A stretch of DNA of 64,000 nt from contig NC_088859.1 of NCBI RefSeq assembly GCF_963853765.1, positions 46,934,001 through 46,998,000 of the forward strand. The letters are read 5' to 3'. This document shows, piece after piece, positions 14,912-16,210 of the stretch; the stretch's first letter is position 1, and every line of letters starts with the position of its first letter. The DNA is from Magallana gigas. Lineage: Eukaryota. Made by a program: the position numbers and the translations under genes. The notes beneath the pieces are model-generated. The model worked only from the letters and a program-made list of their open reading frames with translations, did not search any database and was not told the origin of the DNA.

Positions 14912-16210
14912 ATGGCCGCGGCAGAAGGAAAGACTAAAATATTTCCTAGAATCAAATGTGTACGGGCGTACGTCTCTGAGTCCAAGCCCGAGGACCAGGG
15001 CGCTGACTGTCACGATGTGGAGGACACTCACTGGATCAATGGCTACCCCACCCCCATCGCCAACCCGATGTCTGGGTACGAGCAGTACGCCTCCACTCGG
15101 AAGTCCTGGGGCATCAATGCTCTCGGTACTTTGGTTGTAGAGGTGGAAGCAGACGACGGGACATGTGGAGTCGGCGTCACTATTGGCGGAGTGCCAGGCT
15201 GTTACATCGTGGAGAATCACCTTAGCAGATTCGTGGAGGGACAGGACCCTCGCGATGTGGAACTTATGTGGGACCAGATGTTCAGAGCTACCCTCAACTA
15301 CGGGCGCAAAGGACTGCCAATTCAGTGCATCAGTGCCATCGATTTAGCGTTGTGGGATCTGCTTGGAAAGTTGAGAAATGAACCTGTGTATGCATTACTT
15401 GGCGGGAAAACCAAGCAACGTCTGCCGGTGTATTCCACTACCGCTCGTCCAGACATTGCTAAACAATTAGGCTTTGTTGGGGCAAAAATTCCTTGTGCCT
15501 ATGGGCCAGCTGATGGGGATGAGGGTCTAAAGAAAAATGTAGAAATATTCAAACGATGGCGCGAGACAGTGGGTCCTGACTTTCCGTTGATGTTAGACTG
15601 CTACATGGCACTAACCGTACCGTATACTGTTAAATTGGCAAGAGCACTAGAGCCTCTGGGACTAAAATGGATTGAGGAATTCTTGCCTCCAGATAGCTAC
15701 GATGGGTACAGAGAAGTGCGCGAGGCATTGAGGAGTTCCACGGTTTTACTAACCACCGCCGAACACGAGTACAGTCGCTATGGTTACCAGCTGCTCCTCA
15801 ATTCTAAATGCGTGGATATACTCCAACCAGACATTTCGTGGCTGGGTGGCATTACAGAAGCGCGCAGAATCGTTGCCATGGCTTCCGCCAACGATGTCTT
15901 AGTAATTCCCCACGGATCCAGCATCTATTCCTATCACCTACAATACGCCTTCCGGAATTGTCCACTGGCGGAATTCATCAACCTGAGTCCAAAAGCTGAC
16001 AAGATAGTCCCGTACTTTGGCGGGCTGTTCCCAGACGAACCTTTGCCTTCCAATGGTTTCATAGACCTACCAGATCGTCCCGGATTTGGTGTGACCTTGT
16101 GCAAGGACAGTCTTCGTCGTCCATTCCAGCGCAGTGATGAAGAATCTAGAGCCCAGGCGTCTAAAAACGCCACGTACAAGTCTCAAGAGAAACCTCACAT
16201 GCCATTTTAG
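14912..16210 (+). CDS. rhmD: L-rhamnonate dehydratase (enolase superfamily, mandelate racemase subgroup, RhmD/LRA3 family), single coding exon, 432 aa
   Basis: Uninterrupted ORF colinear with RhmD as I recall it: DCHDV..HWI, PMSGYEQYASTRKSWGINALGTLVVEVEA, AIDLALWDLLGK, GAKIP..GP.DG..G, LMLDCY (metal Asp), LKWIEE (metal Glu), AEHE (metal Glu plus His), QPD, PHGSS.YS.H (general base His), AEF, RPGFGV. AATAAA at 16404. Confidence 0.95.
   Translation: MAAAEGKTKIFPRIKCVRAYVSESKPEDQGADCHDVEDTHWINGYPTPIANPMSGYEQYASTRKSWGINALGTLVVEVEADDGTCGVGVTIGGVPGCYIVENHLSRFVEGQDPRDVELMWDQMFRATLNYGRKGLPIQCISAIDLALWDLLGKLRNEPVYALLGGKTKQRLPVYSTTARPDIAKQLGFVGAKIPCAYGPADGDEGLKKNVEIFKRWRETVGPDFPLMLDCYMALTVPYTVKLARALEPLGLKWIEEFLPPDSYDGYREVREALRSSTVLLTTAEHEYSRYGYQLLLNSKCVDILQPDISWLGGITEARRIVAMASANDVLVIPHGSSIYSYHLQYAFRNCPLAEFINLSPKADKIVPYFGGLFPDEPLPSNGFIDLPDRPGFGVTLCKDSLRRPFQRSDEESRAQASKNATYKSQEKPHMPF

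What the first reader, a model, noticed from the sequence alone, without database searches (positions are those of the whole stretch)
14912..16210. Intronless RhmD/LRA3-family enzyme with an intact active site in an intron-dense animal locus (horizontal-transfer candidate)
Seen: this is the only single-exon host gene in a window where the other genes have 4-27 coding exons, and the RhmD metal ligands and catalytic residues that I can place are all present. Motifs such as YGRKGLP, GPDFP.M.DCYM.L.VPYT and EHEYSRYG look closer to the fungal/proteobacterial LRA3 type than to enteric RhmD (comparison from memory). Established: the acid-sugar dehydratase known in animals is ENOSF1 (L-fuconate dehydratase), a different family. 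Inference: either horizontal acquisition, or ancient retention with widespread loss. There is also a ~25-aa C-terminal tail beyond where enteric RhmD ends.
Basis: partly seen in the sequence, partly recalled or inferred. Interest (0 to 1): 0.72.

Follow-up and report, generated by a model that had tools for sequence, protein, structure and literature searches.

The report
Ancient animal L-rhamnonate dehydratase, secondarily intronless
This oyster gene is a real, expressed sugar-acid dehydratase of the L-rhamnonate dehydratase family; it is not a recent bacterial import, because sponges, choanoflagellates, worms and all mollusc classes examined have it too, and it has no introns only because its lineage lost them.

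Summary
The ORF at 14912-16210 (+) is exactly as described. It is 432 aa, has no introns, and has the enolase-superfamily fold. It passes NCBI's L-rhamnonate dehydratase (RhmD) equivalog model and keeps all five catalytic residues I could map.

- Orthologues at 63-80% identity occur in bivalves, gastropods, a chiton, a brachiopod, annelids, a flatworm, several sponges and many choanoflagellates.
- The mollusc part of the tree follows the species tree.
- The sponge and choanoflagellate genes carry 11-13 spliceosomal introns, some at shared positions. The flatworm has 3, Capitella 1, and molluscs, Lingula and Owenia 0. The intronless state is therefore derived.
- Codon GC matches the neighbouring host exons.
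- Poly-A RNA reads cover the gene on the sense strand without splicing.

A second intact copy lies on another chromosome (dN/dS 0.08).

All eukaryote sequences except the fungal ones form one clade. They share a C-terminal tail ending ...MPF and sit next to a small bacterial clade, so any inter-domain transfer predates animals.

A head-to-head threonine-dehydrogenase-like gene is conserved from chiton to oyster.

RefSeq and UniProt already name the gene. The scan had noted this stretch and the gene pair before, on this same DNA.

The parts
14912..16210 (+). Single-exon CDS (432 aa plus stop) of an L-rhamnonate dehydratase (RhmD/LRA3 family, enolase superfamily)
   Evidence: ORF. Pfam. NCBIfam equivalog 515.8 bits against 393. 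PDB relatives. AF2 model with pLDDT 89.9. RNA coverage without joints.
15596..15598 (+). Codon of Asp229, first Mg2+ ligand (Salmonella Asp226)
   Evidence: Alignment to 2p3z. Nearly invariant in A1. Codon read.
15674..15676 (+). Codon of Glu255, second Mg2+ ligand (Salmonella Glu252)
   Evidence: (invariant).
15761..15763 (+). Codon of Glu284, third Mg2+ ligand (Salmonella Glu280), inside the EHEYSRYG motif
15830..15832 (+). Codon of Asp307, partner of the catalytic His in the His-Asp dyad (Salmonella Asp302)
15911..15913 (+). Codon of His334, general base/acid (Salmonella His329)
   Evidence: (invariant).
16133..16207 (+). C-terminal tail, aa 408-432 (...RSDEESRAQ...N...MPF). It is specific to the eukaryote (holozoan plus protist) clade.
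   Evidence: 44 of 47 clade members end [MFLV]-[PT]-[FLIVM], 25 of them MPF. The tail is absent from bacterial and fungal relatives. The AF2 model predicts a helix at 409-420.
14646..14911 (+). Minimal 5' UTR, continuous with the CDS (no 5' UTR intron seen)
   Evidence: RNA contig of run X1 spans 14646-15471 (table 8).
16211..16572 (+). Minimal 3' UTR. AATAAA lies at 16404-16409.
   Evidence: RNA contig of run X1 spans 15878-16572. Sequence read.
14348..14911 (+). Upstream block shared with the chromosome-4 paralogue (promoter/5' UTR that was duplicated with the gene)
   Evidence: blastn of window 13412-17710 against L011: 85% identity over 1963 nt, equal to window 14348-16282.
8789..11615 (-). 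Head-to-head neighbour: a five-exon Zn-dependent MDR dehydrogenase of the L-threonine 3-dehydrogenase type. Given as context, not as part of the RhmD gene.
   Evidence: All exon pieces hit TDH models best. Nearest solved structures are archaeal TDHs. The same divergent pair occurs in Pinctada and in the chiton Liolophura, 382 bp apart, with all five exons collinear.
13534..14337 (.). Repeat/transposon-like element between the two genes. It is transcribed on both strands and is an insertion polymorphism.
   Evidence: High two-strand depth, many variants, loose ends at 13565 and 14309, and one RNA contig that skips 13568-14306 without GT-AG ends.

Best explanation
This is a host gene of the Pacific oyster that encodes a Mg2+-dependent acid-sugar dehydratase of the RhmD/LRA3 family.

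Inferred mechanism, from the family: Asp229, Glu255 and Glu284 hold Mg2+. The metal binds the carboxylate and 2-OH of L-rhamnonate. His334, polarised by Asp307, removes the C2 proton to give an enediolate and assists departure of the 3-OH. [quoted passage not shown]

Inferred history: the gene was already in the common ancestor of choanoflagellates and animals as an intron-rich gene. It descended vertically to sponges and spiralians, and was apparently lost in most other animal phyla. It lost its introns stepwise in Spiralia: 3 in a flatworm, 1 in Capitella, 0 in Owenia, Lingula and all molluscs examined. In the oyster lineage it was duplicated, giving copies on contigs C7 and C4, both under strong purifying selection.

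What is shown: family membership, intact catalytic residues, distribution, intron series, expression, selection.

What is inferred: the substrate, the physiological source (dietary rhamnose from algae and bacteria) and the downstream steps.
For: Family and active site.

Distribution: orthologues at 63-80% identity in about 20 molluscs, Lingula, Owenia, Capitella, Macrostomum, Amphimedon, Halichondria, Dysidea, Corticium, Sycon and 7 choanoflagellates.

Tree: the non-fungal eukaryotes form one clade (96/97). Gastropods (99/87), bivalves (93/95), Pteriomorphia and oysters are recovered in species-tree order (repeated with fungi). AU tests do not reject Holozoa (p 0.25), Spiralia (p 0.24) or Metazoa (p 0.07) as single clades.

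Introns, given as oyster residue number then phase: 13 in Amphimedon and 11 in Corticium, with 9 positions shared. S. rosetta has 11, sharing 241.0 and 288.2 with sponges. Macrostomum has 3, sharing 344.0 with S. rosetta. Capitella has 1, at 95.1, shared with Macrostomum. Pecten, Pinctada, Haliotis, Liolophura, Lingula and Owenia have none.

No compositional anomaly: GC3 is 0.53 against 0.47-0.70 in the neighbour's exons.

Expression: in poly-A runs the first mates lie on the minus strand only, there are no joints in the CDS, and RNA contigs run 14646-16572 into AT-rich flanks.

Selection: the paralogue is 94% identical in protein, with dN 0.031, dS 0.40 and dN/dS 0.077.

Substrate: the nearest bacterial relatives (61-65% identity) sit beside a GH78 alpha-L-rhamnosidase, a sugar ABC transporter and SDR dehydrogenases.
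Against: - No enzyme assay exists for any animal member.
- I found no clear partners of the pathway in the oyster genome. There is no GH78 rhamnosidase, no RhaM, and only one amidohydrolase_2 locus. The conserved neighbour looks like a threonine dehydrogenase, not a known rhamnose enzyme.
- Deep nodes inside the eukaryote clade are unresolved. A pelagophyte and a cercozoan fall among the holozoans, and Metazoa monophyly is only marginally tolerated (p 0.07).
- Absence from cnidarians, ecdysozoans and deuterostomes rests only on their absence from the 120 best hits.
- RNA depth is low.
Confidence: 0.75

Rival explanations
1. Recent horizontal transfer from a bacterium or fungus into bivalves or oysters, with the lack of introns reflecting the donor.
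For: The gene has no introns. CDS GC is 51% inside 33% GC surroundings. The family is mostly bacterial and fungal.
Against: Orthologues occur across Spiralia, sponges and choanoflagellates and follow the mollusc species tree. The best bacterial identity is 65% and the best fungal identity 50%, against 69-73% to sponges. Introns with shared positions are present in early-branching holozoans and in two spiralians. GC3 equals that of neighbouring host exons. The eukaryote-specific ...MPF tail is shared with choanoflagellates.
Confidence: 0.02
2. An eukaryote-to-eukaryote transfer, for example from a choanoflagellate-like or other marine protist into a spiralian ancestor, possibly by way of RNA. 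On this view the animal copies are not all vertical.
For: Deep nodes are unresolved. A pelagophyte, a cercozoan and unnamed marine protist sequences are interleaved with animals. Metazoa monophyly has AU p 0.07. Most spiralian copies have no introns.
Against: Macrostomum shares intron 344.0 with S. rosetta, and Capitella shares intron 95.1 with Macrostomum. This shows genomic continuity of an intron-bearing gene inside Spiralia; chance expectation is about 0.03 and 0.002 shared positions. Spiralia and Holozoa monophyly are not rejected.
Confidence: 0.06
3. The fold and chemistry are the same, but the physiological substrate is a different acid sugar. Candidates are L-lyxonate or L-mannonate, which enteric RhmD also turns over (from memory of Rakus et al. 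2008), for instance arising from ascorbate breakdown rather than from dietary rhamnose.
For: No rhamnosidase, mutarotase or clear lactonase was found in the genome. The conserved neighbour is not a known rhamnose-pathway enzyme. The clade carries its own C-terminal tail.
Against: The equivalog model is passed with a wide margin. Identity is 61-65% to bacterial enzymes embedded in rhamnose-utilisation loci. Motifs around the active site are conserved with characterised LRA3-type enzymes.
Confidence: 0.15
4. Contaminating microbial DNA or a chimeric assembly.
For: None beyond the prokaryote-like look of a single long ORF.
Against: There are two copies on two chromosome-scale contigs. RNA contigs run from the CDS into AT-rich flanks. 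The same head-to-head neighbour is present in Pinctada and in a chiton. The gene lies in chromosome-scale contigs of many molluscs.
Confidence: 0.005

Closest known systems
LRA3-type bacterial L-rhamnonate dehydratases. These include PDB 2oz3/3ekg (Azotobacter vinelandii, organism from memory) and Swiss-Prot RhmD of Burkholderia, Sphingomonas sp. SKA58 and Polaromonas.
   Same: Full-length alignment scoring 456 bits. Identity is 50-54%, TM about 0.88 by the query and 0.96 by the hit. The metal ligands and His-Asp dyad are the same, as are the YGRKGL and EHE(A/Y)(T/S)R(W/Y)G motifs.
   Different: The bacterial proteins stop at about residue 407 and lack the 25-aa tail. Their genes lie in rhamnose operons.
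Uncultured Blastocatellia/Pyrinomonadaceae, Gemmatimonadota and Chloroflexota RhmD (loci L012-L017)
   Same: These are the nearest prokaryotic relatives, at 61-65% identity. They form the sister group of the eukaryote clade (91/59 and 82/54). They share the DCYMALT and EHEYTRYG motifs.
   Different: They have no ...MPF tail and a high-GC bacterial context with GH78 rhamnosidase, an ABC transporter and SDRs.
Fungal LRA3 (Gibberella zeae 3fxg/2p0i; Pezizomycotina orthologues)
   Same: Same family, 440 bits, with several identical motifs (YGRKGLP, DCYM, EHEYSRYG). They also carry a C-terminal extension.
   Different: Identity is only 47-50%. The extension is unrelated in sequence. In the tree they sit on a long stem, separated from the holozoan clade by bacterial lineages (97/96). 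A common eukaryote clade is borderline (AU p 0.05).
Enteric RhmD/YfaW (E. coli P77215; Salmonella 2p3z, 3cxo, 3d46), the biochemically and structurally characterised reference
   Same: Same fold and catalytic residues, 45% identity, 382 bits.
   Different: The enteric proteins have EHHGTLQS in place of EHEYSRYG, an extra residue in the YGRKG loop, and no tail.
ENOSF1 / L-fuconate dehydratase, the acid-sugar dehydratase known in animals
   Same: Same superfamily and the same kind of reaction on the 6-deoxy-L-galactonate analogue.
   Different: It is a different family. The oyster has its own multi-exon ENOSF1-like gene at G000:C7:36.374-36.376 Mb.

Membership tests
L-rhamnonate dehydratase (RhmD/LRA3; mandelate-racemase subgroup of the enolase superfamily) | Two-domain architecture: an N-terminal capping domain plus a C-terminal (beta/alpha)7beta barrel | tested here: met
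   Pfam MR_MLE_N and MR_MLE_C. AF2 model with pLDDT 89.9, TM by the hit of 0.93-0.97 to Swiss-Prot RhmD models.
L-rhamnonate dehydratase (RhmD/LRA3; mandelate-racemase subgroup of the enolase superfamily) | Three carboxylate Mg2+ ligands at the ends of barrel strands 3-5 (Salmonella D226/E252/E280) | tested here: met
   D229, E255 and E284 align to them and are conserved in 21 relatives. The reference numbering is from memory.
L-rhamnonate dehydratase (RhmD/LRA3; mandelate-racemase subgroup of the enolase superfamily) | His-Asp dyad at strands 7 and 6 as the acid/base catalyst (Salmonella H329/D302) | tested here: met
   H334 (invariant) and D307.
L-rhamnonate dehydratase (RhmD/LRA3; mandelate-racemase subgroup of the enolase superfamily) | Score above the curated equivalog cut-off, and well above sister dehydratase families | tested here: met
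   NF011968 scores 515.8 bits against a cut-off of 393. The next family, galactonate dehydratase, scores 144 bits against its cut-off of 311.
L-rhamnonate dehydratase (RhmD/LRA3; mandelate-racemase subgroup of the enolase superfamily) | Dehydration of L-rhamnonate to 2-keto-3-deoxy-L-rhamnonate | not testable with these tools
   Needs an enzyme assay.
L-rhamnonate dehydratase (RhmD/LRA3; mandelate-racemase subgroup of the enolase superfamily) | Presence of the other enzymes of a non-phosphorylative L-rhamnose pathway in the same genome | tested here: inconclusive
   No GH78 and no RhaM were found, and there is one amidohydrolase_2 locus. SDR, FAH and aldolase families are too large in animals to be read. 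The neighbour is TDH-like. The sister bacterial loci do show a rhamnose context.
Recently horizontally acquired gene in an animal | Absent from related animal lineages and outgroups | tested here: not met
   Present in molluscs, a brachiopod, annelids, a flatworm, five sponges and seven choanoflagellates.
Recently horizontally acquired gene in an animal | Nested inside a donor clade in a supported tree | tested here: not met
   The animal sequences lie in a eukaryote-only clade (96/97). Bacteria are the sister group, not the surrounding clade.
Recently horizontally acquired gene in an animal | Lack of introns is the ancestral state of the acquired gene | tested here: not met
   There are 11-13 introns in sponges and S. 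rosetta, with shared positions. Spiralians show 3, then 1, then 0.
Recently horizontally acquired gene in an animal | Composition unlike host coding sequence | tested here: not met
   GC3 is 0.53 against 0.47-0.70 in the adjacent host exons. The same contrast between CDS and flank is seen in the orthologues.
ENOSF1 / L-fuconate dehydratase | Best match to FucD/ENOSF1 sequences | tested here: not met
   The best PDB and NCBIfam matches are RhmD. A separate locus carries the ENOSF1-like gene.

The most novel reading that the evidence does not exclude
Spiralians, sponges and choanoflagellates keep a working step of non-phosphorylative L-rhamnose (6-deoxy-L-hexose) catabolism inherited from the holozoan ancestor. 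If so, some animals can burn a dietary sugar that animals are generally thought not to metabolise.

In molluscs the enzyme would be co-regulated, through a divergent promoter conserved since the chiton-bivalve split, with a threonine-dehydrogenase-like MDR that may be an unrecognised enzyme of the same route. The clade-specific ...MPF tail would be a new functional element of the enzyme.
Probability: 0.25. Interest if true: 0.6.

Novelty: new member of a known kind. Interest (0 to 1): 0.35.

Why it matters
This is a clean worked example that an intronless, 'bacterial-looking' metabolic gene in an animal can be an ancient vertical inheritance whose introns were lost. Lack of introns plus a GC peak is therefore weak evidence for transfer.

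The gene also marks a conserved but unstudied piece of animal sugar-acid metabolism. It has been held under purifying selection for more than half a billion years (my dating, from the taxa that share it) in filter-feeding and grazing marine lineages, and apparently lost elsewhere.

If the substrate is L-rhamnonate, oysters, sponges and choanoflagellates can use rhamnose-rich algal and bacterial polysaccharides directly. That bears on nutrition, aquaculture and the metabolic repertoire of the first animals.

Tried and rejected
- The search of 50%-identity representatives returned mostly fragments and no full-length close representative, so it was of little use for the tree. Names of ten of those hits were uninformative. 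A further ten yielded one fungal seed, Verticillium P0319, which gave the fungal set.
- The Atlas searches gave only generic cluster names.
- The reference paper on RhmD (PMC2562705) is not held (citation seen). The reference residue numbers are therefore from memory, cross-checked by the alignment offset.
- Literature searches for an animal, oyster or HGT mention of rhamnonate dehydratase found nothing relevant.
- A fungal paper did not give the protein families of LRA1, LRA2 and LRA4.
- Searches of the oyster genome for GH78 and RhaM were negative, and PF04909 gave one locus. The searches work exon by exon, so absence is not proven.
- I could not profile the phyletic distribution of the neighbouring MDR. 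Its spliced protein has no reference, and exon pieces fall outside the length window of the protein search.
- I looked for a poly-A remnant or a sharp transcript-bounded edge in the chromosome-4 paralogue, as a sign of retroposition, and saw none.
- The context of the unnamed sequence P0114 was uninformative.
- The first call for sequencing runs failed and was repeated.
- I did not run complex prediction, because the report claims no binding.
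Full report
OBSERVATION. The window holds a 432-codon ORF at 14912-16210 on the + strand. An in-frame TAA three codons upstream of the ATG closes it. The CDS is 51% GC in surroundings of about 33% GC.

The protein carries the two Pfam domains of the mandelate racemase/muconate-lactonising group. It scores 515.8 bits on NCBI's L-rhamnonate dehydratase equivalog model, whose cut-off is 393. 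The next family reaches 144 bits.

Against solved structures, the best matches are a bacterial RhmD-type chain (2oz3, 456 bits), the fungal rhamnonate dehydratase 3fxg/2p0i (440 bits), and then the enteric enzymes (382 bits). A model built from 21 relatives has mean pLDDT 89.9. It superposes on Swiss-Prot RhmD models with TM about 0.88 by the query and 0.93-0.97 by the hit. Identity is 50-54% to Burkholderia- and Sphingomonas-type enzymes and 45% to E. coli.

In the alignment to Salmonella chain 2p3z, oyster D229, E255, E284, D307 and H334 fall on chain residues 228, 254, 282, 304 and 331. With the two-residue offset of that construct, these are Asp226/Glu252/Glu280 (Mg2+ ligands) and Asp302/His329 (catalytic dyad). 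Those numbers are as I recall them from Rakus et al. 2008, which could not be opened here. All five are invariant or nearly invariant in the alignment.

YGRKGLP and EHEYSRYG are letter-identical in the fungal chain and differ in the enteric one.

NOT A RECENT TRANSFER. A search of 5.8 billion proteins returned full-length orthologues at 63-80% identity. The sources were:
- bivalves: Pinctada, Pecten, Argopecten, Sinanodonta, Dreissena, Ruditapes, Mercenaria;
- gastropods of all major groups;
- a chiton, the brachiopod Lingula, the annelids Owenia and Capitella, and the flatworm Macrostomum;
- five sponges: Amphimedon, Halichondria, Dysidea, Corticium, Sycon;
- seven choanoflagellates;
- a pelagophyte and a cercozoan.

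No cnidarian, ecdysozoan or deuterostome appears among the 120 best hits. Orthologues there would be expected at about 70% identity. This suggests loss but is not a complete survey.

The same look-up shows that RefSeq and UniProt already call the protein 'L-rhamnonate dehydratase [Crassostrea gigas]' (XP_011420754.2, K1QWB0). I found no paper on an animal member.

TREES. With 76 sequences under a site-heterogeneous model, all eukaryote sequences form one clade (96/97). Inside it, gastropods (99/87), bivalves (93/95), Pteriomorphia (98/85), oyster plus pearl oyster (99/88) and oysters (100/100) are recovered in species-tree order. Molluscs plus Lingula form a group (92/88). Deeper nodes are unresolved.

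AU tests do not reject a single clade of Holozoa (p 0.25), Spiralia (p 0.24) or Metazoa (p 0.07).

The nearest prokaryotes are uncultured Blastocatellia/Pyrinomonadaceae, Gemmatimonadota and Chloroflexota (61-65% identity). They form the sister group.

When eight Pezizomycotina LRA3 proteins are added (47-50% identity), they sit on a long stem outside this pair, and the separating branch has 97/96 support. One clade of all eukaryotes costs 21.9 log-likelihood units and has AU p 0.05.

So an inter-domain transfer is likely somewhere in the deep history of the family. Its direction is unproven, and it lies before the split of choanoflagellates and animals.

INTRONS. The orthologues of Pecten, Pinctada, Haliotis, the chiton Liolophura, Lingula and Owenia are single-exon: gene span equals CDS length.

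I mapped exons exactly in the others. Positions below are given as the oyster residue number followed by the intron phase.

| Species | Introns | Shared positions |
|---|---|---|
| Amphimedon (sponge) | 13 | 9 shared with Corticium |
| Corticium (sponge) | 11 | 9 shared with Amphimedon |
| Salpingoeca rosetta | 11 | 241.0 with both sponges; 288.2 with Amphimedon |
| Macrostomum (flatworm) | 3 | 344.0 with S. rosetta |
| Capitella (annelid) | 1 (56 nt, GT-AG) | 95.1 with Macrostomum |

Chance would give about 0.1, 0.03 and 0.002 coincidences for the last three comparisons.

The gene was therefore an ordinary intron-rich eukaryotic gene in the holozoan ancestor. It lost its introns stepwise in Spiralia, and more than once, because Owenia and Capitella differ. 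The lack of introns in the oyster is derived.

COMPOSITION, EXPRESSION, SELECTION. GC3 of the CDS (0.53) lies within the range of the neighbouring host gene's exons (0.47-0.70). The same contrast between CDS and flank is seen in the orthologues.

In two poly-A RNA runs, every read over the CDS has its first mate on the minus strand, the usual sign of a + strand RNA. No joint falls in the CDS. Contigs of another RNA run span 14646-15471 and 15878-16572, running from the CDS into the AT-rich flanks. Depth is low in the roughly 1% of each run that was read.

The genome has a second intact intronless copy on contig C4. It is 94% identical in protein and 90.6% in DNA, and about 560 nt of upstream sequence were duplicated with it. 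Between the copies dN is 0.031, dS is 0.40 and dN/dS is 0.077. The two copies are sisters in the tree.

A third enolase-superfamily locus, with several exons, matches L-fuconate dehydratase/ENOSF1 best.

CLADE-SPECIFIC TAIL. Of 47 sequences in the eukaryote clade, 44 end in [MFLV]-[PT]-[FLIVM], and 25 of those end in MPF. A conserved RS.EES..Q...N stretch precedes this ending. Bacterial relatives stop before the tail, and fungal extensions are unrelated in sequence. The model predicts a helix at 409-420. The tail's role is unknown. It is a shared derived character that supports a single origin of the clade.

CONTEXT AND FUNCTION. In the nearest bacterial relatives the gene lies next to a GH78 alpha-L-rhamnosidase, a sugar ABC transporter and short-chain dehydrogenases. 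This supports L-rhamnonate as the substrate of this branch of the family.

In the oyster I found no GH78, no rhamnose mutarotase, and a single amidohydrolase_2 locus. The rest of a pathway is therefore not identified. From family knowledge, the keto-deoxy product could enter steps shared with the ENOSF1 L-fucose route, but this is inference.

The gene upstream on the opposite strand (8789-11615) is a five-exon Zn-dependent MDR. All of its exons hit L-threonine 3-dehydrogenase models best, and its nearest solved structures are archaeal TDHs.

The same head-to-head pair is present in Pinctada and in the chiton, only 382 bp apart and with all five exons collinear. It is not within 10 kb (6 kb for Capitella) in Pecten, Haliotis, Lingula, Owenia, Capitella, the sponges or S. 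rosetta. The pairing is thus ancestral to molluscs and hints at shared regulation. The family assignment of the neighbour does not by itself make it a rhamnose enzyme.

VERDICT. The horizontal-transfer reading is rejected for any time since the origin of animals, and 'ancient retention with widespread loss' is supported.

The gene is an ordinary, already annotated but unstudied member of the RhmD/LRA3 family. Four points are new here: the intron-loss series, the conserved tail, the oyster duplication and the conserved divergent gene pair.

The scan had already noted this same stretch and the gene pair on this same DNA.

Noticed in passing
window 13534-14337: A repeat or transposon-like element between the two genes. 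It has very high RNA depth on both strands, many variants, and loose ends at 13565 and 14309. One RNA contig skips 13568-14306 without GT-AG ends, so the 739-bp piece is probably an insertion polymorphism.
   Followed up: partly
G000:C4:39948144-39949439 (L011:1501-2799): A second intact, intronless RhmD paralogue. It is 94% identical in protein, with dN/dS 0.077, and about 560 nt of upstream sequence were duplicated with it. No poly-A trace of retroposition was seen.
   Followed up: yes
G000:C7:36374724-36375523 (L096, L097): A multi-exon enolase-superfamily gene whose exon matches L-fuconate dehydratase and human ENOSF1 best. The oyster therefore has both acid-sugar dehydratase families.
   Followed up: partly
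window 8789-11615 (-); L099:5129-9619 (-); L009:1-7818 (-): The TDH-like Zn-MDR gene lies head-to-head with RhmD in oyster, pearl oyster and chiton. In the chiton the gap is 382 bp and the five-exon structure is the same. This divergent gene pair dates to the mollusc ancestor.
   Followed up: partly
L098:6259-6314 and L007 (Macrostomum gene): Capitella's only intron (56 nt, phase 1) lies at exactly the same codon position as one of the three Macrostomum introns (oyster coordinate 95.1). It is absent from Owenia, so annelids lost introns of this gene independently.
   Followed up: yes
window 16884-17151: RNA reads here have first mates on the + strand, opposite to the RhmD reads. Their upstream parts leave the reference at 17015 with one consistent sequence (agreement 0.96). 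This looks like an exon edge of a neighbouring minus-strand transcript, or a repeat (tables 2 and 7).
   Followed up: no
window 16572 onward: The RNA contig that covers 15878-16572 is 1262 nt long, but only its first 700 nt lie on the reference. The rest diverges after 16572, which could be an allele with an indel, a 3' UTR splice or a chimeric contig (table 8).
   Followed up: no
proteins P0337, P0342, P0431: Some Sordariomycete gene models (Echria, Podospora, Cordyceps javanica; 579-703 aa) join a short-chain dehydrogenase domain to the rhamnonate dehydratase. These are either real LRA fusions or merged models of adjacent cluster genes.
   Followed up: no
window 14800-14900 and L011:1390-1490: The roughly 100 nt before the ATG are nearly identical in the two paralogues. 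They include CACGAGATAAATAATTGTCCC, which holds an AGATAA (GATA-type) motif and may be a promoter element.
   Followed up: no
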